Program-made: the position numbers and the translations under genes
In this document: positions 4,079-58,937 of the stretch, in pieces
How the letters are laid out: every line of letters begins with the position of its first letter
How positions within the stretch are numbered: position 1 is the stretch's first letter
The notes under the pieces: generated by a model
Told to the model about the DNA's origin: nothing
The model's database searches: none
The model's input: the letters and a program-made list of their open reading frames with translations, nothing else
Virus record (IMG/VR): IMGVR_UViG_3300010389_000001
Location: 1 to 64,000 of that record
DNA: 64,000 nt
Reading direction: 5' to 3' (one strand)

Positions 4079-4107
4079 TTGATCTCATATCCTAGTCCGG
4101 TTATATA
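4079..4107 (+). promoter_or_regulatory. First copy of the conserved phage promoter TTG-N5-TATCC-N6-GGTTATA
   Basis: TTGATC, 17-bp spacer, TATATA; the motif recurs before most early genes (5316, 5887, 6616, 7073, 8587, 9310, 10516, 11314, 12330, 12835, 15362, 15968, 17257 and later variants). Confidence 0.8.
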
Positions 4108-4153
4108 GTTGGCGAGGGGGCAACGCTTCACCCGCCCCGCTCTGGAGGTTCCC

Positions 4154-5074
4154 ATGGCCGTTGCATCCAAGCGTATCGTCGAGAACACCCTGGTCGCGAC
4201 CCTCGCGGCTCGCGGGTGGGCAGCAGGGGGTTCCCCCCTGGCCCAATCGTGGGCCACCGGTTGGGCGGCCCGTTGGGCCGTCGCTATCGAGGCGTCCTCC
4301 GAACGGGGGGAAGGCAAGTACAATTACACCCTGCTCGCCGAGCCCTTCAATTGCGGGCGTGGTATGCAGGTCTGGGATGCTGCATCCCCTAGCGGTCTCC
4401 TGCTGTCTATCAAGGGCAGTGCGAACCCGGACGCCATGCCGGGTACGGTCCACGTTACCACGGGGAAGCCCGTGGAGGGTGTTATCTCGGCGGCGCGCCG
4501 TGGAGCGCGCATCCCCATTGCCTTCGCTCGGGGCTACGTCGCGCCGGGCTCCGTTCCGGCCGGTACGGAGGGGGCTATCCGCCCCGCCGAAGGGGTGCAG
4601 GTCAAGGTGTTTGACCTGGGTCCTGCAATCCGTGCGTGCGCGGATATTCGAGTCCGTCGTGAGCGGGGGCACGGTGATACCGTGTATTTCGGGATCACCA
4701 GCGCGGGATACCGCGTTCTAAAGGTGAACCTGGCGCACCTCCGGCCCCTCACCGGGTGGCTGGACGCCGCCGGCCTGGACGCATGGGCGAGCGACCAGCC
4801 GGTGGGCTGGTCCAGGAAGGACCGGCACGCTGTCGCCCAAAAAGCCGGAGTCCGGTTGTTCACCAACCACCAGGTGCGCGTGGCCGGGCGCCACGTCTGC
4901 ACGCTTCAGCCGGAAGAGGCAGCCCTCCTTCGGCAGCTCCTCGACGCCCCCGAGGGCGAGTACGTCCGCTTCTGCCGAGTGCAGAAGAACAAGCTCGCTA
5001 ACAAGCTGCGCGGGCATGTGTCCATCCAGAGCAAGAGGAAGACTAAGAAGTGCGAAGGGGGCTACTACCTCTAG
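4154..5074 (+). CDS. Hypothetical protein with possible OmpR/PhoB-type winged-helix C-terminus
   Basis: GGAGGT RBS; C-terminal QVRVAGRHVCTLQPEEAALLRQLL...KLANKL...IQSKRK...GGYYL resembles Trans_reg_C, with a shortened central helix. Confidence 0.55.
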   Translation: MAVASKRIVENTLVATLAARGWAAGGSPLAQSWATGWAARWAVAIEASSERGEGKYNYTLLAEPFNCGRGMQVWDAASPSGLLLSIKGSANPDAMPGTVHVTTGKPVEGVISAARRGARIPIAFARGYVAPGSVPAGTEGAIRPAEGVQVKVFDLGPAIRACADIRVRRERGHGDTVYFGITSAGYRVLKVNLAHLRPLTGWLDAAGLDAWASDQPVGWSRKDRHAVAQKAGVRLFTNHQVRVAGRHVCTLQPEEAALLRQLLDAPEGEYVRFCRVQKNKLANKLRGHVSIQSKRKTKKCEGGYYL

Positions 5075-5099
5075 CCCCCGGGCGTCCTCACGCCCATAC

Positions 5100-5137
5100 G
5101 CCCATCGATCCCCCCGGGGGTCGGTGGGCTTTTTTTT
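5100..5137 (+). terminator. Rho-independent terminator
   Basis: GC-rich hairpin and T8 tract after the stop codon. Confidence 0.7.
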
Positions 5138-5366
5138 GTAAACATTTTGCCCCCCCATGGGGGCGTGTGTGCTCGCTCCCTACGGTCGCCGGGCAAACTG
5201 TTTACATAAGCAAGTGTCAAGAAAGGGTCAAGAAAGCTTGACGCTTGTGCGTATGCGGTTAGGGCTCCCTTTCTTTCGTTGGGGCAATCTGTTTACACAA
5301 GCATGTGAGCAAAAATTGATCTCTTATCCTAGTCGGGTTATATGGTAGTGTAAGAAGGAGCAAGCA

Positions 5367-5690
5367 ATGCAGCCTGAAGCCCCCCACACCCTTCCACACC
5401 CGCCTGCAGGCTGGGTGTGGGAATTCGAAACTTTCCCAAGCGGATGGGTCGAGGTAGACGGACTCGTGTCCGCGCTCGATGCCGATGGGCCGCGCGTGTC
5501 CATCTTCGAGCCGGGCGTCGACCCTGCCGAGGACCTCGATTGGGAAATTATCCTTAGCGCTTCGCGCGTGGACGCGGACGAGGAAAACAACCTCGCTCGC
5601 GAAGAGTTCCCCCGGGGGACCCCGCGCGAGGTGGTGCTGGCCTGCGCAGTGGAGCTAGCTCGCTCATTCGTGAGCCTTAGCCAGCCCTGA
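5367..5690 (+). CDS. Hypothetical early protein
   Basis: Conserved promoter at 5316 and AAGGAG RBS. Confidence 0.7.
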   Translation: MQPEAPHTLPHPPAGWVWEFETFPSGWVEVDGLVSALDADGPRVSIFEPGVDPAEDLDWEIILSASRVDADEENNLAREEFPRGTPREVVLACAVELARSFVSLSQP

Positions 5691-5934
5691 CGGCCCCCCC
5701 CGGGTAGCAAGAGCTACCCGGGGGCATTGTTCGCTCTGGAATTGTAAACATTTTGCCCGGGGCATCCAGCCCCCGTGACGGCCTCCGGTGGGCGGCTGGG
5801 CAATCTATTTACATAAGCATGTGATGCTTCGGGCAAAATAGTTACATAGAGTTACACGCGTGCGGGCAAACCATTTACAGAGATTATTGATCTCTTATCC
5901 TAGTCGGGTTATATAGAAGTGTAAGGAGGTTGCC

Positions 5935-6432
5935 ATGCTGAACACCCGAGAAACCCAGCCCACCCTGATTATCGTCAGGGGACTCCCGGGCGCGGGCAAG
6001 AGCACCATCGCCGAGGAATTCGGCGCGCCCGTGCGGGAAGCTGACAAGTTTCCCGGGCTCTACACGTACCACTCCGATGGGCGCGTGGAGTTCCACGGCA
6101 TGAGCCGCATCGAGGGGATGCCGATGATAGCCAGGGCTCACACCTGGTGTCAAAACCAGGTTCGCGAAGACTTGTCTCGGCTGCCGCCTGTGGCGGTCGT
6201 TGCGAATACTTTCACGCAGGGCTGGGAGTTTGCGCCCTACGTGGAGATTGCGAAGGCTGCGGGAGCCCGCATTGTTGTTATCGACGTGTTCGATTCGGGC
6301 TACACCGATGAGGAGTTGGCCGACCGGAACACCCATGGTGTTCCCGAGCACGTTATCGCCCGTATGCGGGCCAATTGGGAGACCGATTGGCGAGCCGCCG
6401 ACCCCCGGCCCCCTTGGGAGAGGGGAGAGTAG
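5935..6432 (+). CDS. P-loop kinase/ATPase (AAA_33-like)
   Basis: Walker A RGLPGAGKST; VVANTF and RNTHGVP motifs. Confidence 0.85.
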   Translation: MLNTRETQPTLIIVRGLPGAGKSTIAEEFGAPVREADKFPGLYTYHSDGRVEFHGMSRIEGMPMIARAHTWCQNQVREDLSRLPPVAVVANTFTQGWEFAPYVEIAKAAGARIVVIDVFDSGYTDEELADRNTHGVPEHVIARMRANWETDWRAADPRPPWERGE

Positions 6433-6663
6433 GAGCCGCCCCTCCGGGGGCAATCCATTTACATAAGTGTGTAAACATTTTGCCCGGGTCTTTGACTGGA
6501 GCTGGCCTCCCGCCGGGCAATCTATTTACATAAGCATGTTATGCTTCGGGCAAAATGGTTACACAAGTTATACAGGGTCTCGGGCAAAATGGTTACAAAA
6601 GCATGTGAGCAATAATTGCTCTCTTATCCTAGTCGGGTTATAGGGTAGTGTAAGGAGGTTACC

Positions 6664-6978
6664 ATGGGAAACAAGGTTGTGGTTAATAGCTGCTACGGCG
6701 GCTTCAATCTGTCCGAGGACGCGAAGCGGCTGTTCAATCAGATCCAGATTGACCGGCACCTGCCGGTCACGGATTGGGATGCGATCTGGGTGGGCGACAT
6801 CCCGAGGCACCACCCGATCCTGGTTCGGGTGGTGGAGCTGCTGGGCGAGAGGGCCGGAGAACGCTACTCCGATCTCCGGGTCGTGGAGATTCCTGGGAAT
6901 CAGTACCTGATTTCCGAGTATGATGGATTTGAGTCGATCCAGACTCCGGAGGGGATGAACTGGACCTTCATTGACTGA
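6664..6978 (+). CDS. Conserved phage hypothetical protein
   Basis: KVVVNSCYGGFNLS, RHHPILVRVVE, EYDGFE; own promoter and RBS. Confidence 0.75.
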   Translation: MGNKVVVNSCYGGFNLSEDAKRLFNQIQIDRHLPVTDWDAIWVGDIPRHHPILVRVVELLGERAGERYSDLRVVEIPGNQYLISEYDGFESIQTPEGMNWTFID

Positions 6979-7123
6979 GGGTCGCCCCTCCGGGGCAATC
7001 TATTTACATAAGTATGTAAACAGTTTGCCCGAGCATTCCTTGGGAGCCCAGGCAATCTATTTACTCAGATTATTGATCTCTTATCCTAGTCGGGTTATAG
7101 GATAGTGTGAAAAGGAGAAGGCA

Positions 7124-7348
7124 ATGCCCTACGCTGACGACGGACAACTCTACCGCGCGCGAATCAGTGAAATCCTCTCGCGCCTGAACGAGATGCGCGA
7201 TGCACAGCTCCAGCGCACGCTGGAGGCCGCTCGCAGCGGCAATATGGTTGATCCGACGGTGATCGAGTATGATCACCAGAGCGCCGTGTACGAGATGCTC
7301 GCGGACGCCATCCAGGTGGTGGTGGAGGTGGCCTACGCTCCCCGGTAG
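7124..7348 (+). CDS. Hypothetical early protein
   Basis: Promoter at 7073 and AGGAG RBS. Confidence 0.7.
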   Translation: MPYADDGQLYRARISEILSRLNEMRDAQLQRTLEAARSGNMVDPTVIEYDHQSAVYEMLADAIQVVVEVAYAPR

Positions 7349-7544
7349 GCCGGCGCTCCGTCTGGAGGCCCCTCGCGGGGCAATCTGTTTACATACTTAT
7401 GTAACTATTTTGCCCGAGGCAGCGTTGTGATATTCGGGCAATCTATTTACATAAGTGCTCTGCCTTGAAAAGCAAAATATTTACAGAGAAATTCATTGAC
7501 TCTCACAGCTCACCTTGTTATGATAATGAAGTAAGGAGGTTTCC

Positions 7545-7898
7545 ATGACTGATTACGCCGACCTTGTTTCTCAGGCCGACCGGGCGCGGGCAGACATCGC
7601 GCACCTTCATCAACTCCATCTTTGGGACGGGGTTGACGTGTCAGCGGCGCTGGCTATGGCAGAGAAGCATCTAGTATGGATTGAGGAGCAGCTCACCGCT
7701 GCTACCATCGAGGTCATTCATGACATCGGCACGGCCCGCTGGAAGGAGCTTCCGGTGCCCGAAGTCTACAGCCCCGAATGGGAGAAATATTCTGCCCTCT
7801 CGCAGAAGCTTGACTCTGCTCGCCGCTACCTCGCCCAGCTCCGGCAGCTCGGCTTCCCGGCAGTACGCTGGTACCACGCTCCCCGCTTCCATGGCTAG
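7545..7898 (+). CDS. Hypothetical early protein
   Basis: TAAGGAGGT RBS; TTGACT-type promoter upstream. Confidence 0.7.
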   Translation: MTDYADLVSQADRARADIAHLHQLHLWDGVDVSAALAMAEKHLVWIEEQLTAATIEVIHDIGTARWKELPVPEVYSPEWEKYSALSQKLDSARRYLAQLRQLGFPAVRWYHAPRFHG

Positions 7899-8073
7899 CG
7901 GGGGGTTTCCCAGAATTGTAAATGATTTGCCCCGGGACTCTGTCCCGGGCCCCGGCTTCCAGCCGGGCAATCTATTTACATAAATGCGCTCCTTTGAAAA
8001 GAAAAATATTTACAGAGAAATCTGTTGCCCCTTTTGGTCAGCTCTGTTATGTAAGTAGAGTAAGGAGGACACT

Positions 8074-8451
8074 ATGTCGGTTCACACTTTTGAATCCTTC
8101 GAACTCTTTCACCACCTTCCGGCGGATGCCCTCGCGGGCCTGCCATTCGCGGTGGCGGAGAAAATGGATTTGGATTTCGTCGAGTGGGGCGGCGTCCATG
8201 GCGAGATCAGCGCGAAGCGCCTCGCGGACGCTGGCATCGAGGATCTCTCTAAGTGGGAGGTTATCGGAGGCAAGCTCATCGACCACAGCGGTTGGTGTGA
8301 CTTCGAGCAGAAAATGGAGTTTCACTATGAGGATCTTCGGATCCTAGTGCGCAAGTCTCATCTCGCGGAAGCCCAGCGGGCTTTCTGCGATGGCCCAGCT
8401 CTGACCCATAATCCTTTTGCGGCCGCTCTCTCGAATCTTCGGGGAGGCTGA
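8074..8451 (+). CDS. Hypothetical early protein
   Basis: TAAGGAGG RBS. Confidence 0.7.
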   Translation: MSVHTFESFELFHHLPADALAGLPFAVAEKMDLDFVEWGGVHGEISAKRLADAGIEDLSKWEVIGGKLIDHSGWCDFEQKMEFHYEDLRILVRKSHLAEAQRAFCDGPALTHNPFAAALSNLRGG

Positions 8452-8639
8452 GGCCTCCGGCCGGGCAAATTATTTACTTAAGTGTGTAAATGGTTTGCCC
8501 GGGTCTTTGGCTAGAGCCGGCCTCCGGCCGGGCAAACCATTTACCGTAATCTGTATGGTGTTCGGGCAATCTATTTACAGAGATTATTGATCCCTTATCC
8601 TAGTCGGGTTATGAGGCAGTGTGAACCCAGGAGGACACC

Positions 8640-8846
8640 ATGGCACGCATCCGCACCACTTACCAGCCCACTCCCGGCGCCAGCGAGGACCAGGTCCTCC
8701 AAATCGCATTTCGGTGCGGCCGGGACCTCGACCCCGACGATCGCCGTGCGCGGTGGATCGATGCCCTCGATGGCGCAGCCTACACGGCTGCGGTGGAGGC
8801 CTACCATGCAGGCCAGGCCGAGGCCTATGAGTGTGAGGGCTGGTAG
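8640..8846 (+). CDS. Hypothetical early protein
   Basis: Promoter at 8587 and AGGAGG RBS. Confidence 0.65.
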   Translation: MARIRTTYQPTPGASEDQVLQIAFRCGRDLDPDDRRARWIDALDGAAYTAAVEAYHAGQAEAYECEGW

Positions 8847-8915
8847 CCACCGGCCCGGCCGGGCAAACTATTTACAGAGTAAACATTTTGTTTTGCAAAT
8901 AGTTTGCCCCGGGGC

Positions 8916-9125
8916 TCAGTCTCCCTTGACGGTGCCCCGACAAGCCTTCCGGCTTTGCTCCTTTCGAGCATCCCCGTGGGATCCGGCCCGTCCAGAGTTC
9001 CCGAGAATCATCCCGAGCACTTCGAGGTTCCGTCGAGCCGGGGCAATTTGTTTACCGTTTTCCATTGCCCTCCGACGGGCGCGAGCCTTCCGAGCCTTCC
9101 GACGTTGCTTGTTTGAGCGCGACAT
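8916..9125 (-). CDS. Small Arg-rich basic protein (inverted module)
   Basis: AGGAGGT RBS on the minus strand; MSRSNKQRRKARKARARRR. Confidence 0.6.
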   Translation of the reverse strand: MSRSNKQRRKARKARARRRAMENGKQIAPARRNLEVLGMILGNSGRAGSHGDARKEQSRKACRGTVKGD

Positions 9126-9362
9126 GGCTACCTCCTAAGGAGGATTAACACGATGAACCGGGAAGGCTAGGAGAAATATCATCCGGGCAAATTATTTACA
9201 AATCCTTATTCGGGTGTCGGGCAAACTATTTACAAAGGCGTGTCAAGGCTTCGGGCAAACTATTTACACAAGTTGCACAGGGCTTCGAACAAAATGTTTA
9301 CATAGAAAATTGATCTCTTATCCTAGTCCGGTTATGTAGTAGTGCCACGAAGGAGAAGTATC

Positions 9363-10265
9363 ATGGCTAAGGCATCGACCCTGATTGAAGAAACCGACGC
9401 CCGTATCGCGGAGGGCATCATCGCGAGCATCGATGACGCGGAAGCCCGTGGCGTCAAGTGGGTCCCCGGGTGGGACCGTTCGGCTGGGTTCCCCTCGAAC
9501 CCGGTTACGGGCCGCCAGTATGGCGGAAACTACAACGGGCTCGTGCTGCTGATTGCAGCATCGCAATTCGGCGACAGCCGGTTCGCTGGCCGTAGCCAGT
9601 GGCGAACCAAGGGGAATGTCATTCCCCGGGACACCATTGGGACGAAAATCTTCTTTCCCCGGTTTGTGTGCGTCAAGTGCAACAAGATCGCGGGATTCGC
9701 GAAGAAGTGCTCCGGTTGTGGAGCCCAATTCAAGCGATACACCGACAAGCGGTGCATCGGCTTTGGCGAGTCTGAGGTTTTCAACAATTTGCAAGGCGAA
9801 ACCCCGTTGCCCGAGGCCGGGTCCGATTGGGAAGTTACGTGCGAGGAAGCTCGCAAGATTGTGGAGAAGGCTGGCGCGGATGTCCGCCACGGCGGTGGGC
9901 GTGCGTTCTACTCCCCGAAGGAGGACCGTATTCAGCTTCCCGAGATGGCTTCCTTTCACGATGAAGCGGCCTACTGGGCCACGAGCTTGCACGAGCATGC
10001 ACACTGGACCGGCCATAAGACGCGGCTCGCCCGTCCTGGCATCGTCAACATGACGGGCTTTGGTTCGGCCGAGTACGCATACGAGGAGCTTGTGGCGGAA
10101 ATTTCCGCGAGCTTCCTGTGCAAGCATGCGGGTGTGCAGCGTGAGGGTCTTGACGACCAGCATGCTGCCTACCTCGCCAGCTGGCGAAAGGCTCTGAGCG
10201 ACGACCCTTCCATCATCCGCAAGGCAGCGGGGGAAGCTGGCAAGGTGCTCCGCTACCTGACCTGA
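9363..10265 (+). CDS. ardC: ArdC-like antirestriction/ssDNA-binding protein (DUF1738 plus zincin domain) with a Zn-ribbon insert
   Basis: NPVTGRQYGG.N, AFYSPKEDRIQLP, LHEHAHWTGH, YAYEELVAE, HAAYLASW; CxxC...CxxC insert. Confidence 0.88.
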   Translation: MAKASTLIEETDARIAEGIIASIDDAEARGVKWVPGWDRSAGFPSNPVTGRQYGGNYNGLVLLIAASQFGDSRFAGRSQWRTKGNVIPRDTIGTKIFFPRFVCVKCNKIAGFAKKCSGCGAQFKRYTDKRCIGFGESEVFNNLQGETPLPEAGSDWEVTCEEARKIVEKAGADVRHGGGRAFYSPKEDRIQLPEMASFHDEAAYWATSLHEHAHWTGHKTRLARPGIVNMTGFGSAEYAYEELVAEISASFLCKHAGVQREGLDDQHAAYLASWRKALSDDPSIIRKAAGEAGKVLRYLT

Positions 10266-10563
10266 TCTGCCCGGCCCCGGGAATTCCCGGGGCCTTTCGC
10301 GCTCGTGTGAATGTAAATATTTTGTTTGCCGGAAATGTAAATGATTTGCCCGGGGTCGTGCCCCGATCCGGCCTGCGGCCGGGGCAAAATGTTTACGTAA
10401 GTGTGTAAAAAGAGGGTAAATTTGTAGGCAAAGTATTTACACAGAGTCACTCACACGCAGGCAAATCATTTACATTCTCTTTGCCTTCCTTCGGGCAATC
10501 TATTTACATAGAAAATTGATCTCTTATCCTAGTTGGGTTATAGGGTAGTGTAGGGAGGTTCCG

Positions 10564-10764
10564 ATGGATTGGCAAAGGTTGATTGCTCTGGCGATGATTG
10601 CAGAGCAGGTTGATGCTTGGCTCACAGCTAAGGTTTGCCTGGCCTTCTTCCAAAAGAATGGCATGGAAATTTCTGAAGATATGTGGCAAGAAGCCGCAAA
10701 GCTGGATATGGAGCTAGAAGGAATGATGATGACGGCCGACGGCTGGATATCCGGGGAAGCGTGA
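10564..10764 (+). CDS. Hypothetical early protein
   Basis: Promoter at 10516 and GGAGGT RBS. Confidence 0.6.
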   Translation: MDWQRLIALAMIAEQVDAWLTAKVCLAFFQKNGMEISEDMWQEAAKLDMELEGMMMTADGWISGEA

Positions 10765-10895
10765 GAAACCTGGGTCGGGGGGAGAGGGTGACTCCCCCCG
10801 GCCTCTCACCGCTCTGTAAATTGTTTGCCCGGGCTTTCCCCATTTTTTATTGCGCTTTTTCTCTGAATCGGTTATCAGTCTTGTAGGAGGTAGCG

Positions 10896-11081
10896 ATGGA
10901 AAAGCATTCCACCCACATCCGGTGCGCGTTCTGCGGCTGGAAAGCACTCAAGTTCCGCAAGCTAAAGTCTGGAAAGACTCGCGGCCCGGATGCAGCCTTT
11001 CAGATGCTGTTTAACCATGCGGCCGCGCATCATCCGGAGCAATTTGACAAGGCTTTTCCCGACCGCTTTGAGGAGGAGTGA
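10896..11081 (+). CDS. Small C2H2-type zinc-binding protein
   Basis: CAFC...HAAAHH; AGGAGGT RBS. Confidence 0.55.
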   Translation: MEKHSTHIRCAFCGWKALKFRKLKSGKTRGPDAAFQMLFNHAAAHHPEQFDKAFPDRFEEE

Positions 11082-11381
11082 GTCGGGGGGTAAATTATTT
11101 ACACAAGCGTGTAAATAGATTGCCTGGATGGCTGATGGATATTGTGGCTTCATTCGGGCAATCTATTTACATAATTAGACCCAACCCTCTGGGCAATCTA
11201 TTTACATTGCCTTCCCATCGTTCGGGCAAAATAGTTACCTAATCCATTTCTCTCCCGGGGCAAACTGTTTACACAATCGCCTTGGTCCCCGGGCAAACTG
11301 TTTACATAGAAAATTGATCTCTTATCCTAGTCGGGTTATATGGTAGCGTGAGGGACGAACCCTCGCAGGAGGTAAACAACA

Positions 11382-11783
11382 ATGGCTAACATCTTCACCA
11401 CCGAGACCACCGAGAGCGCCGTCCAGAACATCAAGGGCACCATGCGCGTGTACCGCGACGACGACGGAGAGGCTTACGTCTCTTTTGCAACGAACAAGGG
11501 GAAGGGCAGCGGTGCCCAGGTTATCCCCGTCGCTGAATTCGCCGATTGCGTTGCAGCCTTGGCGGAAATTTCTTCCAACGGTCTGCCTGAAGTGGAGGAG
11601 GAAATCTCTACCTCCGAGTCGATTCGTCGCACGGCAGCTCTGTCCGATGGGGTTATTTCCTTCCGGGTTCGCTCCGGAAAGGGAGCTAAGCCTGCCAAGG
11701 TTTCCAGCGATGAACTTGCCGACGTGGTAAAGCTTCTCCAGGGAACCGTCAAGGCTGTGGAGAAAGCAGCGAAGGATCTCTAG
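11382..11783 (+). CDS. Tandem-domain GKG protein, paralog 1
   Basis: SFATNKGKGSGAQVIP and SFRVRSGKGAKPAKV internal repeat; paralogs at 17372 and 34141. Confidence 0.8.
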   Translation: MANIFTTETTESAVQNIKGTMRVYRDDDGEAYVSFATNKGKGSGAQVIPVAEFADCVAALAEISSNGLPEVEEEISTSESIRRTAALSDGVISFRVRSGKGAKPAKVSSDELADVVKLLQGTVKAVEKAAKDL

Positions 11784-12377
11784 AGCGAAGGCCCATGGCA
11801 CGCGGGCTAAAGCGTGCCGCCCCTTGGGGCGTATGCCTGAAATGTAAATAAATTGCCCGGGGAGGTGCGCGTGCTTGCAAACGTGCTGGACCTTTCTAAC
11901 GCTCATGTTCCGGGCCCAACTCCAAATTGGGGACGGGTGCGCGTGGTTGAGCATGAATTCGGATGGATTGTCTTTATCTCTGGTGACCTTGGAGATAGGG
12001 AGGCCCGTCGAACGGTTCCCGATTGGATGCTTGGAATTTGGAAGCATGCTGTAAATGAGGGCTGCATCGCTGTCATATTCGACAGAGACGCGGACGTGGA
12101 TGATCGTTTTCTGAAATTCAATTGGTGAGCTAATGGAAGGTCGGCGAAAGCCGAACTTCCTTTCTTTGTTTTCTGTAAACATTTTGCCTGAGCTTCTTTG
12201 TAAATATTTTGCCCGGGCTTGTGTGTTGGTATCCGGAAAGCAAGGGGATATTACTTATCAGGTAATATCCCCGGGCAAAACGTTTACTTAATTGGTGCGC
12301 ACACGCAGGCAAACTGTTTACTCAGAAAATTGCTCTCTTATCCTAGTTGGGTTATAGGGTAGCGTAAGGAGGTTGAG

Positions 12378-12680
12378 ATGAGCAACTTGGTTGGTGCGCC
12401 GGAAGAGGTTTTGGTTGTCCACAGGCTTCTTGTGGAAAACGCTGAGGAAGCAGGGTACGATGCCTCCTTTGTGTATTGTCGCGAAGAGAGGTGCTATCCT
12501 GACTACGAGCCTTCGGGAAATTGGCTCGTCGGGCCAAACATGGAAGGCTTCGGAGGCACCATGGTTCGCACGTCTGCTGGTAATTGGTTTTACCGCGAGG
12601 CATGGAGCGGCGAGGACATCCCGATGAAGGCTGGCTTTGAAGAAGCCAAGTCCGATGCATCATGCTGGTTCACGGGGTGA
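12378..12680 (+). CDS. Hypothetical early protein
   Basis: Promoter at 12330 and RBS. Confidence 0.65.
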   Translation: MSNLVGAPEEVLVVHRLLVENAEEAGYDASFVYCREERCYPDYEPSGNWLVGPNMEGFGGTMVRTSAGNWFYREAWSGEDIPMKAGFEEAKSDASCWFTG

Positions 12681-13034
12681 CCCGCCCCTCCGGGGCAATC
12701 TATTTACAGAGCCTCCGGGCAAAATGTTTGCAAAACAAAATGTTTACCCTGTAAATAGATTGCCCGGTGGCTTTGGCTCAAACAAAATATTTACTTATCT
12801 CTGAGCCAGCAGGGCAAATCATTTACATAGAAAATTGATCTCTTATCCTAGTTCGGTTATATGGTAGCGTAAGGAGGTTGGAATGGAATGGACGGAAATT
12901 TACGTGGCTATCTACAGGGCTACGTGCGATAGGTGCGGGCATGCGGGTCAAGGTTGGTTCTGGATTAAGGGGACCCATGATAGGGGAACCCTCTGCATTG
13001 ACTGTTACCACCGGCAAGGTTAAGGGAGGCTCCT

Positions 13035-14097
13035 ATGGAAGATGAATTGGAATATCACCAATGCGACCGTGATTCGTCTTGGTGGGAAAATGATTATCAG
13101 GGAATTCCCCTTGCGAGGGTTTGCGATAGATGTTATGAAGCTAAGATGGCACGTTTCCGTCCGGAGATTCTCACCGGGTATTCTCAAGGCGACGTTGACG
13201 AGCCAATCGACCCCGATTGGTAATGGGTCGCCTGATTCCTTCTAAAGAATTGGATAAAGCAACACGCACAAGAGGTTTATCATGGCAAACTCAGACGTGA
13301 TCAAGGCATGGGTCCGCGAGGAAGCGTGCAGTTCACAAAACCTTAGCACCGATGGTATTTCTCTTTGGAGTTATCGTCTTAAGATTGGAGATACTATCTG
13401 CGGAAAGAAGGTCGTGTATGACCACACGTCCAATGGTCTAGGGTTTGTTTCCAGAACAACATCTAAGCATGTGGGTCTCGCTAAGTATGAATGCTCCAAG
13501 TAAACCAGGCTGGTATTGGTATAATGATGGTGGAGAATGGGAGGTAGTATTGGTTAGGGGAAATAAATTCCTTTACGTCAAGAGGCTTTCGGGTTATACT
13601 CAGTCGGGCGTGCCACTCTCATGCGTGCGTGGAACTTGGGGCTCTGAAGTTAAGCGAGGTGAATAATGGGCATCACAATCTTTCTAGAAGAAGAATACGG
13701 CTACCGTTACTGGCTGTGGGAAACGGGCATGGACGCGGAAGCGCTCATGTGGTGGTGGTCTAGCCTTTCCTCTGTCGATGAATACTTCTTCGATCCTACA
13801 GGGCTTCCTGGAAAGCTTACGCAGCTGTTTGACTTTACGGACACGCTTGTGGCTAACGTCCTCTCTGAAGATATTGAAGAGGATATTAAGAATAAGAAGC
13901 TAGAAAAGCTGTTTCGCAGTAATCCTATCTGGATTAAGAGCGGAGATATGGGCTATGACCCTCACGCGACCCATGTGGACGTGCCTGGACTAACGGACGG
14001 GTGGACCGCGCACGTCCACATGAACGATGATTCATGGATTAAGCCGCCTGGTAATAAAGAGATATGCCTTGGAGGTAACGATGGTTCGAACCGCTAG
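13035..14097 (+). CDS. Cluster of small hypothetical proteins (13035-13223, 13282-13503, ~13487-13666, 13666-14097)
   Basis: Tightly packed ORFs with RBSs after the promoter at 12835. Confidence 0.55.
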
Positions 14098-14818
14098 AAC
14101 CCTTGGTTACATAATCCTTAGCTTTCTGGATTATGTGGCCGAAAGAAGAGATAGCAGAGTGGGCATTAAAGATGCTGTTCAATCTGCTTTGAGACGCCCG
14201 GTTTAATCCGGGCTTTGTTGTGCCTTTCTTTGGCCTTATTACTTAGCTAAGTAATAAGCTCAGGCAAAATGTTTACTTAAATCTGAGATTCCCTCGGGCA
14301 AAATATTTACATTAAATGTGAGAACTACTTACATTCCATCGGGCAAATTGTTTACTTAACCAGTAAGAGGCCATTACATAACATAGTAAATGGTTTGCCC
14401 GGCGCGCTTTTTGTTTTCTATCTTTTCTGAATAATTAAGACTCAAGTTATTATTTGGGAAATAAATAATAACTTAACTCTACCTTAATAGGGGCTAATGA
14501 TTATTTTTCAAAATCCATTTAATCATCCAAGTCGCGGTAACCAGATGAGGATTCTCTGGATTGTTAATATGAAGGTTTCTTAGAAGCCAGCGAAGATTAG
14601 GATTCGTTAGATTCTTTCTCATTTGGGGAACCGACATTTGATCCAAAACCTTTTGGAGTTCCGCCTTCTGATTGGTCAGATCCTTAACAGACATAATCTA
14701 TAGCCCTCTTTGTTAAAAGATTTCTACTGGTTTGTTTTGTTATTTGACTTGCTTTGTTAGATGCCCCTCGCGCGGGGGGCGAGAAGGGGGCGTGTGCGCG
14801 CGGAAGAACGCGTTAGCT

Positions 14819-49372: not shown

Positions 49373-50252
49373 AGGCGGTAGTAGGCTTTGCGGCTGGGAA
49401 GAAAGGCAGATTTCCTTGTCAATATTAAAAATATTGCATCTTATCCCAGGCGGGTTACGGTCTAGTGCAGGAGTAGTTCTTACAATGATGCTTGCATTCT
49501 GCGAGGCGCCACATGGCTCCTATGAAGAGGTTATCTGCGTAGCCAGAAAGAGGCTAGATTCAATGGATGATAGCCTTTTGAGAGATGCCGTAGCAGATGG
49601 ACTACTCGATGATGATTACTCAAAATATGAGCTTAAGGAGTCAGATCTATACAATCTGGACAACCCTTTGGCCATGTATCTGAGAGCCCAAGTAATGGAG
49701 GCTGTAGATATTGTTCTTATATCAATGGATACAAGCCTGCATGTTACCACCAGAATTCTAGATAATAAAAGCTGGGCATTTACTGGCGGGCAAACTCTTG
49801 AGGAATTTCCCTCTGATATATTTAGAAATATACTGATAATAGAGTACTTTAACTTATTCAGGGACATGGGCTCTAAGGACTTTGATTATGAAGATTGCAA
49901 TTCCTGGTAATCAGTGGTTCCTAAAAATTATTCAATAAACCAATACCCAAGGGAGGTTTTCCTTGGGCATTGGTGTTTGTGGGTGTTGCGGTGAGCATTG
50001 TAAACGGCGTCATTATCTTTCTGCTTGGACTAGTGATCGGTATTTATTCCGGGTATAGGATTGCAGGCTTTTTTGCGGTACTAGCCATGCAGACTTTCGA
50101 TTTCAAAAAGATGAAGTGGGAAGAGAGCATCTTTGCTTATCGCCCAAAAAGATTCTCTGATAATCTAAGGCCGGGAGATGTAATTTCATTTACGCTAACA
50201 CCGGACCTTGCAAATATATTTAATGGCATTGCAAGGTTAAAGGAAAAGAATA

Positions 50253-51380: not shown

Positions 51381-51466
51381 TTTGCCAAAGAGTTCGTAGC
51401 GATGATATAATTTAAGGTTATTTTGCGCAAACAATATAATAAAAAAAACATGGAGAAGATTAGAGT

Positions 51467-52321
51467 ATGTCAACTGCAAGTGTAATTGATTCTGTAATTA
51501 AAAGTAATCCAGTTCTATCTCATCAGGAGCAAGTAGATCTAGTAAACGACTGGCAGCGCAACTCAAACAAACTAAGCTTAGACAAGCTAGTTCTATCAAA
51601 TATGAAGCTAATCAATAAGGAGGCTTTCTCCGCGAAGAAGAAGAACGGCCATCTTTCTTACGATGATCTGGTACAGGAAGGAATTGCTGGCTTGCTAAAG
51701 GCCGCAAATATGTTTGATTCATCTCATGAGGTGAAGTTCATAACTTATGCTATGCTATGGGTCAAGGCTAATATGCGGGCTCATGTTATGAGCAATCGAT
51801 CAATAGTTAAGATGGGAACTACTCGTGATGACAGAGTTCTATTTAACAATTTGTCAAAGGTATCGAGGGAGGCCGACCTCTCTGGGGTCGAGGGAGAGGC
51901 GAAGGTAGAGTATATCTCAAAGCGCTTAGGTGTTGGGAAAGGTTCTGTTAGAAAGATGCTTTGCTCAACCAGGGGATACGACACAAGGCTTGATGCCCCA
52001 GTAAAGTCGGATGATGGCTCAGAGACTCTTCGAGTTACTCTGCTTGAAGATGAGGGTTCTGGCGAAGCCCAGACTATCTTGGACGTAGCGAGTGAGAAGA
52101 AGGTGGCGATACTAGAGGCGACAATTTCATCGCTGCCTGAATCTGAGTCAAAGATTATCCGAGACCGCTATCTTGCTGATAACCCAAAGACCCTTAGGGA
52201 GCTAGAGAAGGAAATGTCTATCTCGCGCGAATGGATTAGAAAGCTTGAGATGCGTGCTTTGAATCGAGTCAAGAAGCGCCTAAAGACAGAGTATGGAATC
52301 TCTGATATGCTAGATATCTAA
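51467..52321 (+). CDS. Sigma-70 family RNA polymerase sigma factor, RpoH-like
   Basis: DLVQEGIAGLLKA, FITYAMLW, RpoH-box-like VKMGTT...LFNNL, TLREL...SREWIRKLE. Confidence 0.88.
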   Translation: MSTASVIDSVIKSNPVLSHQEQVDLVNDWQRNSNKLSLDKLVLSNMKLINKEAFSAKKKNGHLSYDDLVQEGIAGLLKAANMFDSSHEVKFITYAMLWVKANMRAHVMSNRSIVKMGTTRDDRVLFNNLSKVSREADLSGVEGEAKVEYISKRLGVGKGSVRKMLCSTRGYDTRLDAPVKSDDGSETLRVTLLEDEGSGEAQTILDVASEKKVAILEATISSLPESESKIIRDRYLADNPKTLRELEKEMSISREWIRKLEMRALNRVKKRLKTEYGISDMLDI

Positions 52322-52649
52322 AATATTTTTTAGTATAATTTTTTTATGGGCGCTAACGAAGATTACAAAAAATATAAATACATTATATGGAGCCAAGAAG
52401 AAGGCCTCTTTTCTATAGACTCTATATCAGATGATGATCTAAAGTCAATATCAACAGCCTTAAATATAGAGTTGACCAAAAGGGTTGAGGAAGATACCTC
52501 GGCTAAGTTTAAAAAGCTAAAAGACTGCTGATTAATCAGTCATTTCTTCGACGGCTTTTGGGCGATTTTATCACCATACTTATAAAACACAAGAATTTTG
52601 TTGCACATTATTCTGCCTGGGTTATAAGAAGTGGGACAGCTTTTATTAT

Positions 52650-53992: not shown

Positions 53993-54008
53993 AGCCTTTG
54001 GAGGCATT

Positions 54009-55521: not shown

Positions 55522-55523
55522 TC

Positions 55524-56318
55524 GTGAAGGCAAGTGCAAAGCAGAAGAAAATTTTTGATTCTTTTTTTCTTCATATGAAAAAAAATATCGAAGTAATTAG
55601 AAAGCGTTGGGCAATCAATCTTAAAAATAAAGATTCTGTAATTGACTTTTGGGATTCTCTCAGCAAGGCCGACAAGAAGCGACTTGTCTCGCATCCTAGC
55701 TTTAAACATTATCCCTCATGCAGTTGGTCTAGAACCTCAAGAAAGCCATACGGAGAAGCCATAGGCCATCTTGTATCTAAAAGAATTATGCTGTCTCCAT
55801 CCGACAGGCAGCTTCTAGTGAAAAATGCCGTAGGTGTTTTTGCTGTTTATGCCTTCGATCAGGCAGAGGCTTATGAAAAAATAGCTATGTCGAAAAGACT
55901 CTTTTATTCTACCGATAAGCGAGTTAGGGGCAGGTCGCTAACCTATGCTCCACTCCCAATGATTAAGAGAGAAATGATCTCTGTAATTAGCAGGGGCGAT
56001 TGGAGTCTGACTAATAAGCTTGTAAAAAGAGTTGGATTTATAAACTGCTATAGGCTATTTATTCCGGATAATCTAGAGCGGCTCTCTAATAAGAGATTCT
56101 CTTACAACTATTACTGGTGGACGCGAAAAGCCCTGGAGTTTGCATCAAGGTCGGAAGTAAAGCATTTGGATGATCAGATAGATAGCTGCAATAGCGATTT
56201 AGTCAAGTCAATCCTTATTAGCAAGATGCCTGCAAGCAAGATGTTATTTTATATGAATAATACATCAAAAGGTATGCGTACCGCAGAAGTCCTGCAGCGC
56301 AAACTGGAGATTATTTAA
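55524..56318 (+). CDS. Hypothetical basic protein
   Basis: 264-aa ORF within an operon. Confidence 0.6.
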   Translation: MKASAKQKKIFDSFFLHMKKNIEVIRKRWAINLKNKDSVIDFWDSLSKADKKRLVSHPSFKHYPSCSWSRTSRKPYGEAIGHLVSKRIMLSPSDRQLLVKNAVGVFAVYAFDQAEAYEKIAMSKRLFYSTDKRVRGRSLTYAPLPMIKREMISVISRGDWSLTNKLVKRVGFINCYRLFIPDNLERLSNKRFSYNYYWWTRKALEFASRSEVKHLDDQIDSCNSDLVKSILISKMPASKMLFYMNNTSKGMRTAEVLQRKLEII

Positions 56319-57971
56319 ATGTGTGGTTTTTCGGCTTATTATGGCGAAGCGCCAGAACGCTTTGCAGAAGATGGTTTGTCAGTTAGGTATCGAGGCCCAG
56401 ATAATTCGGCGTTCAGAGAGGTGTCGAATAAAGTTGGTATGCTTTTTCATAGGCTTGCCATAGTGGGGCTAGATGAATCTGGAAATCAGCCGCTACATCA
56501 CAATGGTATATACCTAGTCTGCAATGGCGAGATATATAATCATAAGGAACTAATTGAAGCAGAATCCTTTCCAGTAGACACAACATCAGACTGCGAAGTT
56601 ATAATCCACCTGTATGAAAAGTACGGAATATCAGAGTGTCTCAATAAGCTGGATGGCGTGTTTGCCTTTTTCCTATATGATTCCGACAGAGATATAGCTT
56701 ACGCAGCAAGAGATAGGTTTGGCGTTAGGCCGGCATTCTTCGGCATAAGCAATGGAACTCTTTGTGTATCATCAGAAGCAAAGGCAATTGCCAATTTTGT
56801 CGATACCGTATTTCACCTTGAGCCTGGCAGGTACATAGATTCAGTTTCGTTAAGCCAGATAAGCTATTACAGTCTTCCGATTGGGCACACGATTATTGCT
56901 CCAGATATCGCCAGATACACTGAGGGTGTAAAGCGAGAGGTAAGATGGCGTCTCGTTAAGGCGGTCGAGAAGAGGATGATGTCAGACAGAGAGGTTTGTT
57001 GCCTCCTTTCTGGAGGGCTAGATAGCAGCCTGATAGCATCGATTGTATCGATGATGGTAAATGGTTATAGGCTGGTCAGATACGCCGAAAGAGACTCCTG
57101 GGAGTTCTTCGAGGATAAGAAGCTTGATTATAAGTTAAAAACATTTTCAATAGGGATGGATGGCAGCCCTGACCTTGATTATGCAGATATTGCAGCAAGA
57201 TGGATTGACTCTGACCACCATCGAATCGAGCTAACCGAAGAGGAATTCTTATCTAACATTGAGCGAACTATATACGTTACGGAATCGTATGATACAACTA
57301 CGGTTAGAGCCAGTGTTGGCAACTATTTAGTATCTAAGTATATCTCAGATAATACTGATTGCAAAGTAGTATTTAATGGCGATGGAAGTGATGAGGTATG
57401 TTGTGGTTACATATATAACGCTAATGCTCCATCTCCATATGCTTTGCACAAAGAGTCGATGAGACTTGTAAATGAGATTTACTTATTTGATGTACTGAGG
57501 TCAGACAGATCAATAAGCTCTAATGGGCTTGAGGCTAGAACGCCATTTCTGGATAAGGACTTTGTGCAATACTATATGTCCATTGACCCCAGCCTAAAGA
57601 TGTTTGGCTCGAACTATAAGATAGAAAAAGAGCTTCTGAGATCGTCATTTAGGAATGATGGCTTGTTGCCAATGGAGATACTTTGGCGACATAAGTGTGC
57701 TTTTTCCGATGGGGTATCGGCAAAGGAGAAGTCTTGGCATAAGACTCTGCAGGCTCATATAGATTCAGAGATAACCGATGATGAGTTTGAGCAAGAAAGG
57801 ATTTCTATAAAAAATTGTACGCCAGAGCTAAAAGAAAGCCTATACTACAGAAGGGTGCATAGAAAGCTTTTCCCGGAATCCATGGATGATATTATCCCGC
57901 ACTTCTGGATGCCAAAGTGGACTAATGTAAAAGACCCATCTGCAAGAGAACTAGACTCAAACAAGGAATAG
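56319..57971 (+). CDS. asnB: Asparagine synthetase B (glutamine-hydrolysing)
   Basis: MCG N-terminus, RGPD, NGEIYNH, RDRFGVRP, LLSGGLDSS, GDGSDE, EARTPFLD. Confidence 0.95.
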   Translation: MCGFSAYYGEAPERFAEDGLSVRYRGPDNSAFREVSNKVGMLFHRLAIVGLDESGNQPLHHNGIYLVCNGEIYNHKELIEAESFPVDTTSDCEVIIHLYEKYGISECLNKLDGVFAFFLYDSDRDIAYAARDRFGVRPAFFGISNGTLCVSSEAKAIANFVDTVFHLEPGRYIDSVSLSQISYYSLPIGHTIIAPDIARYTEGVKREVRWRLVKAVEKRMMSDREVCCLLSGGLDSSLIASIVSMMVNGYRLVRYAERDSWEFFEDKKLDYKLKTFSIGMDGSPDLDYADIAARWIDSDHHRIELTEEEFLSNIERTIYVTESYDTTTVRASVGNYLVSKYISDNTDCKVVFNGDGSDEVCCGYIYNANAPSPYALHKESMRLVNEIYLFDVLRSDRSISSNGLEARTPFLDKDFVQYYMSIDPSLKMFGSNYKIEKELLRSSFRNDGLLPMEILWRHKCAFSDGVSAKEKSWHKTLQAHIDSEITDDEFEQERISIKNCTPELKESLYYRRVHRKLFPESMDDIIPHFWMPKWTNVKDPSARELDSNKE

Positions 57972-58937
57972 GCACAAGATCTTTTTTTAGTGATGCCTTT
58001 AATATATAGGGGTTATTATGAAGAAAAAGATCTATGGCTATAAGATAAGAAACAAAAAGACGGGCAAGTATTTAGCTTCATCTGGAAACTGGACAAGCAT
58101 TGGTAAGGTCTGGGCAAGAAAGGGCGGAGCTATAAAGAAGCTAAATGACCTTCTAAAAAGAGCGTCAAATGCAGAAAAAAGATGGCATGGCGGGCGAAAG
58201 CCTGATTGGCTAAAAACAAAAGAAGATCTATTGGAAGAGATTTTACAATGCGAAGTAGTAGAATTATCTGAGTCTAACTCATACCCAATAACTTTTGAGA
58301 TAGACAAGATAAAGGTTTAATATATGTCTTTTGCCATTCCATCGGAGAAAGAAACTCCACAAACCCTCTGGAAAAGCCAGAGGGAAATGGGCGGGAGAAT
58401 TCTGCTAAAGATACCTTTTGATTCTACCGAAGCTGATATGCAGGGATTCATATCTACTATGGGGTCGAAAGATAGCGGTCTTCCCGTCCTTACGGTATGC
58501 GTCGCGAAGCCGACAGGTGGTGCCATAGTTTCAACTATAGTCTTCCCGTCATCCGAGAAATACATGGATTTTATTTCTCTAGCCTCTTCGGACTCTCTTC
58601 TTCATTTTTTTGAAGACCAAGCTGTTTGACGTAGATCGGGCGATAGAATCCGCCGTAGTCCAAATTCATGCTTAGATTAACGTAAGGACTAATGCTTTCG
58701 GGAATGATTCTGTTTTCAGCACTTAGGGTTTCAGATATATTCCCATAAGTTTTATCTGATCCATATATTTCTGCAATAAAAAATAAAGATATTACAATAA
58801 TAATCAATGATTTATTTTTCATGATCTAATCTCTTGCCCTCTTTTATACCCAGTTTTCAATTATTAGTATAATCGGGAGGAATTTTTTTGCACTTTATCC
58901 CGGCCCGGTTATAGCCCCTATGGAGGAGTGCGCCTTT

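What the first reader, a model, noticed from the sequence alone, without database searches (positions are those of the whole stretch)
4079..58915. Genome-wide promoter with a near-palindromic TATCC-N6-GGTTA element spanning the spacer and -10
Seen: ~27 copies. Fifteen have a near-invariant TAGTCG-type core (4079-17257). Twelve have a variable N6 and TTGCAY/TTGCCC (18206, 18795, 21778, 23583, 26005, 26845, 29896, 34639 minus, 35574, 49434, 52601, 58888) and sit before tRNAs, tmRNA and tilS among others. TATCC and GGTTA are conserved while N6 varies, and they are a one-mismatch inverted repeat. Inference: either an operator for a dimeric regulator that switches the class off together, or a recognition element for a phage-modified RNAP or sigma.
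Basis: partly seen in the sequence, partly recalled or inferred. Interest (0 to 1): 0.65.

Follow-up and report, generated by a model that had tools for sequence, protein, structure and literature searches.

The report
Phage promoter class with fixed spacer pentamer
About thirty near-identical promoters drive the non-structural genes of an uncultured aquatic jumbo phage; the "palindrome" is most likely chance, made of the start of the -10 region plus a conserved spacer pentamer, so this is an unusual promoter class rather than a repressor site.

Summary
TATCC-N6-GGTTA occurs 27 times in the window (0.1 expected), plus one one-mismatch copy before the tmRNA.

It is not genome-wide. The window is the first 64 kb of a 232.5-kb jumbo-phage record, and all 31 sites lie between 4 and 79 kb. 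The other 153 kb uses TATAAT-type signals.

All sites look like promoters: an A/T tract, TTGCAC or TTGATC, a 16- or 17-bp spacer, then TATAGG-like bases, a conserved GTG, and a Shine-Dalgarno site or an RNA gene.

- **GGTTA** is G-15 G-14 T-13 T-12 A-11, the upstream edge of the -10 region.
- **TATCC** sits at -26 to -22. It keeps a fixed distance to GGTTA, while the TTG hexamer shifts by 1 nt between the two classes.
- **The dyad is probably chance.** The T/T asymmetry is fixed in 31 of 31 sites. The closest relatives keep GGTTATAGG but carry CATTC, CATCC or GATCT on the left.
- **T-7 is present in 1 of 31 sites**, which fits a primary sigma poorly.

My best reading is a middle/early promoter class read by RNA polymerase carrying the phage's RpoH-like sigma. 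Host sigma and an overlapping operator remain open. I also found 70 copies of a 14-bp box arrayed upstream of class-1 promoters.

The parts
4079..17293 (.). Class-1 promoter cluster: 15 near-identical cassettes. TATCC starts at 4088, 5325, 5896, 6625, 7082, 8596, 9319, 10525, 11323, 12339, 12844, 15371, 15977 and 17266 (+), and at 17179 (-). Layout: TTGATC (TTGCTC or TTGACC in some sites), TCT, TATCC, TAGTCG-type N6, GGTTAT, then GTG and AAGGAGG.
   Evidence: ATG typically 23 nt after GGTTA
18206..18241 (+). Class-2 promoter before the 150-aa ORF at 18294-18746, with a 64-nt leader
18795..18830 (+). Class-2 promoter before the GP88-family gene at 18842-19480
21670..21705 (-). Class-2-like promoter (TTTCCC hexamer) with no ORF. 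About 100 nt downstream lies a terminator hairpin at 21609-21578, so this is a candidate small RNA.
21778..21813 (+). Class-2 promoter before the ORF at 21849-22151; divergent from the 21697(-) site
23583..23618 (+). Class-2 promoter upstream of tRNA-Arg (23814), in tandem with a consensus-type promoter at 23633
26005..26040 (+). Class-2 promoter 47 nt before tRNA-Leu (26076)
26845..26880 (+). Class-2 promoter before the deaminase-like gene at 26896-27270
29896..29931 (+). Class-2 promoter before tRNA-Lys (29975)
34604..34639 (-). Class-2 promoter (TTGCCC hexamer) before the minus-strand paralogue gene at 34569-34141
35574..35609 (+). Class-2 promoter directly after a terminator hairpin (35542-35568). 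Its -10 variant is GGTTAGGGG. A 140-nt leader runs to 35738.
49434..49469 (+). Class-2 promoter (GGTTACGGT variant) heading the operon of the 141-aa ORF, ligase and sigma1
52601..52636 (+). Class-2 promoter with TATTC (one mismatch), 25 nt before the tmRNA (52650-53026)
58888..58923 (+). Class-2 promoter before the TilS-N-like PP-loop gene at 58938-59627
51467..52321 (+). sigma1: RpoH-like sigma factor with regions 2 and 4; the candidate reader of this promoter class
51382..51411 (+). Near-consensus sigma70-type promoter, TTGCCA-N18-TATAAT, in the 87-nt gap before sigma1
23633..23661 (+). Near-consensus sigma70-type promoter, TTGCCA-N17-TATAAT (11 of 12)
5138..17248 (.). Dense arrays of the 14-bp box GGCAA-N4-KTTAC upstream of class-1 promoters. 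The proximal box starts 31 or 42 nt before TATCC and the period is 33-34 bp. Scattered copies reach 35521.

Best explanation
These are about 31 promoters of one temporal class (early or middle, non-structural genes) of an uncultured aquatic jumbo phage. Each has an A/T-rich upstream tract (often the T-run of a terminator), a -35 hexamer TTGCAC (class 2) or TTGATC (class 1), and a 16- or 17-bp spacer. The -10 region begins inside GGTTA (G-15 G-14 T-13 T-12 A-11, then T-10 A-9 and variable -8/-7). TATCC is not half of an operator palindrome. It is a spacer element at -26 to -22, one helical turn upstream of GGTTA and locked to it rather than to the -35. The G+C-rich N6 lies between them. I infer that the whole 16-mer is read by RNA polymerase holoenzyme, most probably carrying the phage's RpoH-like sigma1. 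By analogy, GGTT plays the part that the C-rich 'extended -10' plays for E. coli sigma32. In this model host sigma70 holoenzyme starts the cascade from a few consensus-type promoters, two of which sit directly before the two phage sigma genes. Shown here: the sites, their anatomy, their confinement to 80 kb, the lack of T-7, and the behaviour in relatives. Inferred: the start sites, which sigma reads them, and what contacts TATCC.
For: 27 window sites against 0.1 expected; 31 in the genome, all between 4 and 79 kb. All are co-oriented with downstream genes, tRNAs or the tmRNA, with fixed spacing to the Shine-Dalgarno site and ATG. TATCC-to-GGTTA spacing is 6 in 31/31 sites, while the TTG hexamer is shifted 1 nt between the classes. 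In class 2 the flanks and N6 have diverged (13 N6 variants in 16 sites), yet TATCC is kept in 15/16 and GGTTA in 16/16, which indicates selection rather than recent copying. T at -7 occurs in 1/31 sites and A-11 in 31/31. The standard sigma70 scan does not pick these sites up. Consensus-type promoters do exist in the genome, at 51382 before sigma1, at G000 108340 before the operon holding sigma2, and at 23633. sigma1 is RpoH-like over its full length. Its region 2.4 reads WVKANMR, like RpoH WIKAEIH and unlike SigA WIRQAIT; its region 4.2 keeps the R-E..R of SigA, which fits a TTG-type -35. Published sigma32 promoters are TTGAAA plus CCCCATWT with a C-rich extended -10, and Ehrlichia sigma32 uses TATATN with a free sixth position (PMC6687850). 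Here TTGCAC is followed by 13 nt (class 1: 14 nt) and then GGTTATAG. No Pfam-detectable phage RNA polymerase is encoded. Relatives keep the skeleton xAT..-N6-(T/G)GnTATA while the pentamer drifts, so the dyad is not conserved.
Against: There are no transcript data: no RNA run holds the phage, so start sites and timing are inferred. sigma1 itself lies downstream of a class member (49442). In the closest relative with DNA (L218) I found no consensus-type promoter within 2.9 kb upstream of sigma1, only the class-type one. That is awkward if the class strictly needs sigma1. Orthologous promoters in L210 and L216 have TGnTATAAT or TGnTATAAA, which a host primary sigma could read. Class 1 drives genes one expects very early, such as the ArdC-like gene. 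The host is unknown.
Confidence: 0.5

Rival explanations
1. These are host-dependent early promoters. The host's primary sigma holoenzyme reads TTGCAC/TTGATC, G-14 (a partial extended -10) and TATAnn. TATCC and the G+C-rich N6 tune strength or DNA shape for that host's polymerase. The phage sigmas serve later classes.
For: The -35 hexamer, the 16/17-bp spacer, and T-12/A-11 all fit sigma70 geometry. G-14 is invariant, and relatives have true TGn extended -10 with TATAAT or TATAAA at orthologous promoters. The class drives early-looking functions and sigma1 itself. L218 shows no other promoter before sigma1.
Against: T-7 is near-universal for primary sigmas but occurs in only 1 of 31 sites; G is preferred at -7 and -8. 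Consensus TTGACA/TATAAT-type promoters exist elsewhere in the same genome, so the host apparently reads the usual consensus. A scan of 185,579 species' genomes for TTGCAY-NN-TATCC-N6-GGTTAT gave 102 hits at chance level (about 140 expected), none promoter-like. The extended motif is therefore not a host promoter form.
Confidence: 0.25
2. TATCC-N6-GGTTA is an operator for a phage-encoded regulator, either a dimer tolerating an imperfect dyad or an asymmetric-site binder. It overlaps the core promoter and switches the whole class off, or on, together.
For: Two invariant pentamers sit 11 bp centre to centre, on one face of the helix, with a free N6 and 4 of 5 dyad positions matching. Their invariance exceeds that of the -35. 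A site centred near -18.5 would occlude polymerase. Every promoter-like GGTTA comes with TATCC.
Against: The T/T asymmetry is fixed in 31/31 sites, and no symmetric variant occurs at a promoter. In relatives the left pentamer changes (CATTC, CATCC, GATCT) without any compensating change on the right, leaving 2/5 symmetry. GGTTA is explained by the -10 region alone. The site never occurs away from a promoter. No Xre-type HTH protein reaches the Pfam cut-off, and no MotA or AsiA match was found, though those two searches had no positive control. The 14-bp box arrays are a better operator candidate for class 1.
Confidence: 0.2
3. The sites are not promoters but a repeated site for recombination, packaging or replication that happens to sit between genes.
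For: The class-1 cassettes are near-identical repeats that could mediate recombination, and other repeat families surround them.
Against: The sites show strict co-orientation with genes and fixed distance to the Shine-Dalgarno site or mature RNA 5' ends. They have an upstream TTG hexamer and A/T tract, and some have terminators just upstream.
Confidence: 0.03

Closest known systems
sigma32 (RpoH) promoters: E. coli TTGAAA plus CCCCATWT with a C-rich extended -10; Ehrlichia chaffeensis TTGTAT plus TATATN (PMC6687850)
   Same: A TTG-type -35; 13-14 nt to a 4-nt block that precedes an invariant A-T-(A/T); the sixth -10 position is free; an RpoH-like sigma is encoded next to the sites.
   Different: The block is GGTT, not CCCC. 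An extra invariant pentamer sits at -26 to -22. Dependence on sigma1 is untested. sigma1 scores below NCBI's RpoH cut-offs (173 against 323 bits).
Sigma cascades and early-promoter clusters of large lytic phages, such as the SPO1 host-takeover module and gp28, gp33/34 (from my own knowledge)
   Same: Many strong, nearly identical promoters and strong Shine-Dalgarno sites before small genes in one end region; phage sigma genes; separate late signals.
   Different: The motifs are unrelated. Here the class also drives tRNAs, the tmRNA and metabolic genes over 75 kb. Timing is unknown.
T4 early and middle promoters, including the MotA box with AsiA (from my own knowledge)
   Same: Within-genome conservation goes well beyond the two hexamers, and a conserved element lies upstream of the -10 at fixed distance.
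   Different: The MotA box replaces the -35 at about -30. Here a TTG hexamer is kept and the extra element lies in the spacer. No MotA or AsiA match was found (those searches had no positive control).
Promoter-plus-stem-loop cassettes (PeSL) that shuffle genes in T4-type phages (from my own knowledge)
   Same: Class 1 consists of repeated hairpin-plus-promoter cassettes between small, variable genes.
   Different: The hairpins here are built from a 14-bp box that also forms direct arrays with a 33-34 bp period. Mobility was not tested.
Palindromic operators of dimeric repressors overlapping core promoters (from my own knowledge)
   Same: Two pentamers one helical turn apart, overlapping the -10, at many promoters.
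   Different: The dyad is imperfect in a fixed way and is not kept in relatives.

Membership tests
Primary-sigma (sigma70-type) promoter | A -35 hexamer resembling TTGACA | tested here: met
   TTG occurs in 29/31 sites; TTGCAC or TTGATC match 3-4 of 6 positions
Primary-sigma (sigma70-type) promoter | A 16-18 bp spacer to a TAnnnT hexamer with A-11 and T-7 | tested here: not met
   The spacer is 16 or 17 bp and T-12/A-11 occur in 31/31 sites, but T-7 occurs in 1/31 (G in 22, A in 6). No other register gives a consistent TAnnnT. The consensus scan misses all sites.
Primary-sigma (sigma70-type) promoter | Extended -10 TGn at -15 to -13 | tested here: inconclusive
   G-14 occurs in 31/31 sites, but -15 is G, not T. 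Relatives L210 and L216 have a true TGn.
sigma32-type promoter | TTGAAA-like -35, then 13-15 nt, then CCCCATWT | tested here: inconclusive
   The spacing (13 or 14 nt) and the A-T-W core are met. The 4-nt block is GGTT rather than CCCC, and the final T is absent (consensus from PMC6687850).
sigma32-type promoter | Transcription depends on an RpoH-family sigma | not testable with these tools
   An RpoH-like gene is present, but there are no RNA data
Operator of a homodimeric repressor | Dyad symmetry of the two half-sites, kept through evolution | tested here: not met
   4/5 pairs match, with a fixed T/T mismatch in 31/31 sites. Symmetric versions are absent at promoters. Relatives show 2/5.
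Operator of a homodimeric repressor | A cognate DNA-binding protein is encoded | tested here: inconclusive
   HTH_3 matches fall below the cut-off only. Most early proteins have no family.
T4-type middle promoter (sigma appropriation) | MotA box at -30 replacing the -35, with MotA and AsiA encoded | tested here: not met
   A TTG hexamer is retained and the extra element lies at -26 to -22. There are no MotA_activ or AsiA matches, but those searches lacked a positive control.
Promoter of a phage-encoded RNA polymerase | A phage single-subunit or multisubunit polymerase gene | tested here: not met
   PF00940 and PF00562 give no match in the 232-kb record. The record is about 68% complete, and very divergent enzymes would be missed.

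The most novel reading that the evidence does not exclude
A clade of widespread aquatic jumbo phages has evolved, with its own RpoH-like sigma, a tripartite promoter. A base-specific element at -26 to -22 (TATCC here; CATTC, CATCC or GATCT in sister lineages) is read one helical turn upstream of a GGTT-type extended -10. That would be a promoter element at a position where no sigma contact is known, and it would co-evolve lineage by lineage.
Probability: 0.15. Interest if true: 0.65.

Novelty: new variant of a known kind. Interest (0 to 1): 0.42.

Why it matters
Phage-specific promoter classes with extra conserved bases are well known, so the kind is not new. Three things here are unusual and testable. 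First, five invariant bases sit in the spacer at -26 to -22. Second, the -10 lacks T-7 in 30 of 31 sites. Third, the genome encodes two sigma factors, each preceded by a consensus host-type promoter. The phage belongs to a large uncultured clade found in marine, sediment and freshwater metagenomes of 13 studies. A defined sigma-promoter pair would give a first handle on its gene-expression programme. It could also yield an orthogonal sigma/promoter pair. The 14-bp box arrays may be the real class-wide switch.

Tried and rejected
- **Near-identical phage in GenBank phages:** none. DnaE-like polymerase, sigma and terminase reach only 25-37% identity to cultured phages, so neither host nor family could be named.
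- **Motif scans of IMG/VR:** TTGCAY-NN-TATCC-N6-GGTTAT and TATCC-N6-GGTTATAGG gave only single, non-promoter-like hits at chance level.
- **Scan of one genome per 185,579 species:** 102 chance-level hits, none promoter-like. One IS-like repeat in Candidatus Galacturonibacter was set aside.
- **RNA evidence:** no RNA run holds the stretch. DNA contigs from four runs showed 95-99% relatives and cross-mapping between promoter copies, but no usable variant table at the motifs.
- **sigma1 single-protein scan of IMG/VR:** no relatives. The closest relatives (74-77%) from ENA and Logan had no retrievable DNA. The metagenome scan with an alignment supplied them instead.
- **nhmmer with a class-2 model:** this finds the promoter type only in L217/L218. 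Deeper relatives have their own extended motifs.
- **Alternative readings rejected:**
  - TATCC as a -35 for GGTTA: an 11-bp centre distance is too short for the sigma2-sigma4 geometry.
  - TATCC as a -35 for the downstream GTG: the start site would then fall inside or after the Shine-Dalgarno site.
  - MerR-type spacer operator: the spacer is 16/17 bp, not 19-20, and the dyad runs into the -10.
  - IHF-like WATCAR-N4-TTR: the register is off by 3.
  - sigma54: there is no GG 10 nt upstream of TTGCA.
  - T7-like promoter: no such polymerase is encoded, and N6 varies where specificity bases should lie.
- **Common RNA fold of the four GGCGAGG leaders:** none found.

Full report
**What the window is.** The window is bases 1-64,000 of a 232,533-bp IMG/VR virus record. 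The record is linear and CheckV rates it 68% complete. Nearly all genes lie on the + strand.

The record encodes:
- a DnaE-like polymerase, SbcC, UvsX, terminase and portal;
- two GroEL genes;
- an RpoH-like sigma, an Asn/Asp-type tRNA synthetase, ATP-dependent ligase, UvdE, asparagine synthase and a glutamine-synthetase-like protein;
- a TilS-N-like PP-loop protein;
- seven or eight tRNAs and a tmRNA.

Cultured phages are only 25-37% identical in the polymerase, sigma and terminase. The host is unknown. Strain-level relatives occur in sediment, marine, freshwater and aquaculture metagenomes of 13 studies, and no RNA run holds the phage.

**Checking the observation.** TATCC-N6-GGTTA occurs 27 times in the window, against 0.10 expected. 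A 28th site before the tmRNA reads TATTC. The whole record has 30 exact sites plus that one, all between 4,088 and 79,132. The motif therefore marks one 75-kb region, not the genome.

No N5 or N7 variant exists. No promoter-like TTG-N13/14-GGTTA site lacks TATCC. It missed the minus-strand site at 21697.

**Anatomy.** I number bases on the assumption that TA of GGTTA is -12/-11. All start sites are inferred.

Class 2 (16 sites) reads as follows:
- an A/T tract;
- TTGCAC at -34 to -29;
- two variable bases;
- TATCC at -26 to -22;
- a G+C-rich N6 (77% G+C, 13 variants);
- G-15 G-14 T-13 T-12 A-11 T-10 A-9 G-8 G-7;
- conserved G at -3 and -1.

Class 1 (15 sites, 4-17 kb) is a near-identical cassette of about 65 nt. 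It has TTGATC one base further upstream, giving a 17-bp spacer, and AAGGAGG follows almost at once. The ATG typically lies 23 nt after GGTTA.

All sites are co-oriented with what follows. Downstream features include ORFs with strong Shine-Dalgarno sites, tRNA-Arg, tRNA-Leu, tRNA-Lys, the tmRNA and the TilS-like gene. One site (21697 minus) has about 100 nt and then a terminator, so it may make a small RNA. Several sites directly follow a terminator hairpin whose T-run doubles as the upstream A/T tract. This is promoter anatomy. It is inference from sequence, not a measured start site.

**Is the near-palindrome meaningful?** Four of five dyad positions pair, but position 3 is T opposite T in 31 of 31 sites. 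Neither perfect palindrome occurs at any promoter. The TTG hexamer slides by 1 nt between classes while TATCC stays 6 nt from GGTTA. TATCC is therefore positioned relative to the -10, not the -35.

The sigma1 gene has a large family of orthologues at 43-77% identity on contigs up to 348 kb. A metagenome scan fetched syntenic loci. Their orthologous promoters compare as follows:

| Lineage | sigma1 identity | Promoters seen | Left element | -10 region |
|---|---|---|---|---|
| L217/L218 | 75% | tmRNA; 141-aa gene | TTGCAK, CC, CATTC, GATAYG | GGTTATAGG |
| L216 | 76% | tmRNA | CATCC at the same position | TGT TATAAA |
| L210/L219/L221 | 66% | three promoters | GATCT or CATCG | TGY/GGG TATA-AT/GG/GA |

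The right-hand part behaves as a -10 region throughout. The left pentamer drifts without compensation, so symmetry falls to 2 of 5. Deeper relatives (L212, L228, L226/L261) carry other lineage-specific extended motifs before TATAnn. An nhmmer model of class 2 finds only L217/L218. I conclude that the dyad is coincidental. GGTTA is the upstream edge of the -10 region, and TATCC is a separate spacer element under selection. The selection argument is that class-2 flanks and N6 have diverged while TATCC has not.

**Which polymerase form?** The record has no Pfam-detectable phage polymerase, so host core enzyme is used. T-7 is the hallmark of primary-sigma -10 elements, yet it is present in only 1 of 31 sites. 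The standard scan misses every site.

The genome does contain near-consensus TTGACA/TATAAT promoters. Two of the five intergenic 11-of-12 matches lie directly before the two phage sigma genes:
- 51382, TTGCCA-N18-TATAAT, before sigma1;
- G000 108340, TTGTCA-N17-TATAAT, before a Cas4-like gene and the very divergent sigma2 at 109146-109952.

sigma1 aligns over its full length to E. coli RpoH (PDB 8hkc). Its region 2.4 is RpoH-like (WVKANMR against WIKAEIH; SigA has WIRQAIT). Its region 4.2 keeps the R-E..R of SigA, which fits a TTG-type -35.

Published sigma32 promoters are TTGAAA plus CCCCATWT, with the C-run acting as an extended -10. Ehrlichia sigma32 uses TATATN with a free last position (PMC6687850). 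The present TTGCAC-N13-GGTTATAG has the same geometry and the same A-T-W core, with GGTT in place of CCCC.

Late intergenic regions (80-232 kb) are instead enriched 3.2-fold for TATAAT without a -35. That could be sigma2's class.

I therefore favour a cascade: host sigma70, then sigma1 reading the TATCC/GGTTA class, then a late class.

Four points count against this:
- sigma1 lies downstream of a class member (49442).
- L218 shows no consensus promoter within 2.9 kb upstream of its sigma1.
- Some relatives' orthologous promoters are good TGnTATAAT sites.
- Class 1 drives early-looking genes such as an ArdC-like protein.

A mixed model is possible, in which host polymerase gives weak recognition and sigma1 amplifies it.

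**What reads TATCC?** This is unknown. The pentamer lies one helical turn upstream of G-15/G-14, on the same face of the helix. No sigma domain is known to read bases there. Candidates are a diverged sigma1 domain 3, a polymerase-bound phage protein, an asymmetric-site repressor, or a DNA-shape requirement. No Xre-type HTH protein reaches the Pfam cut-off, and no MotA or AsiA match was found. A scan of 185,579 species' genomes found the extended motif only at chance level and never in promoter context, so it is phage-specific.

**A second, larger repeat system.** A near-palindromic 14-bp box, GGCAA-N4-KTTAC, occurs 70 times in the window against 0.26 expected. The genome has 73 copies, almost all between 5 and 36 kb.

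- Upstream of nearly every class-1 promoter, the proximal box starts 31 or 42 nt before TATCC. The difference of 11 nt is one helical turn.
- Further boxes follow at 33-34 bp intervals, up to five in a row.
- Convergent box pairs 22 bp apart form long hairpins just after gene ends.
- Four class-2 sites have one box at 50, 51 or 74 nt.

If a regulator switches a promoter class as a group, these arrays are a better candidate operator or enhancer than the TATCC/GGTTA 16-mer.

**Verdict.** The promoter reading is well supported by anatomy. 'Genome-wide' is wrong, and the palindrome is probably chance. This is a new variant of a known kind, namely phage-specific promoter classes in a sigma cascade. 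Its unusual features are a fixed spacer pentamer and a -10 without T-7.

Noticed in passing
window 5138-35521 (dense 5138-17248): A 14-bp near-palindromic box, GGCAA-N4-KTTAC, has 70 copies against 0.26 expected. It forms direct arrays with a 33-34 bp period upstream of class-1 promoters; the proximal box starts 31 or 42 nt before TATCC. Convergent pairs form long hairpins after gene ends. It is a candidate regulator-binding or curvature element.
   Followed up: partly
window 3690-4080: A non-coding stretch holds two more repeat families, CTGCAAAGCTT-like (about 6 copies) and TGTCAA[AG] (more than 10 copies). It lies just before the first class-1 promoter, at the border between A/T-rich and G+C-rich DNA, and looks iteron- or origin-like.
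   Followed up: no
window 4001-12000: G+C is 55-59% here, against 37-45% in the rest of the record. This island holds the small class-1 genes.
   Followed up: no
G000 108340-109952 (outside the window; L022 and L297): A second, very divergent sigma-70-family gene (268 aa, weak ECF/SigF-like) lies behind a Cas4-like nuclease gene. The operon is headed by a near-consensus TTGTCA-N17-TATAAT promoter.
   Followed up: partly
window 11382-11783 (+), 17372-17803 (+), 34141-34569 (-): Three paralogous proteins of 133-143 aa with no family match, each with its own TATCC/GGTTA promoter.
   Followed up: no
window 21570-21705 (-): A promoter without an ORF, followed after about 100 nt by a strong terminator hairpin (21609-21578). 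This is a candidate small RNA, divergent from the 21786 promoter.
   Followed up: no
G000 80,500-231,700: Late intergenic regions are enriched for TATAAT (20 against 6.2 expected, in 16 of 38 regions) without a -35, and for ACTAAT (11 against 2.2). This is a separate late signal.
   Followed up: partly
window 4104, 18230, 21681 (-), 35598: Four promoters with long leaders are followed by GGCGAGG(G). No shared fold was found.
   Followed up: partly
window 9363-10265: A protein combining the ArdC N-terminal domain with a zincin-like metallopeptidase (MPTase-PolyVal) sits behind a class-1 promoter. It is a likely anti-restriction function.
   Followed up: no
window 46231-46307: Rfam calls a weak tRNA here (30.3 bits, cut-off 29) that ARAGORN does not report.
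   Followed up: no
G000 65172-66773 and 126038-127675: Two GroEL-like chaperonin genes in one phage genome.
   Followed up: no
L216, L225, L228, L267: Relatives carry tmRNAs with related 14-residue tags (ANNNYFYNSVALAA, ANNNYYYNNVALAA, ANDNYFNNDVALAA, ANNNNHFYAAALAA). The tmRNA is a conserved clade feature next to sigma1.
   Followed up: no
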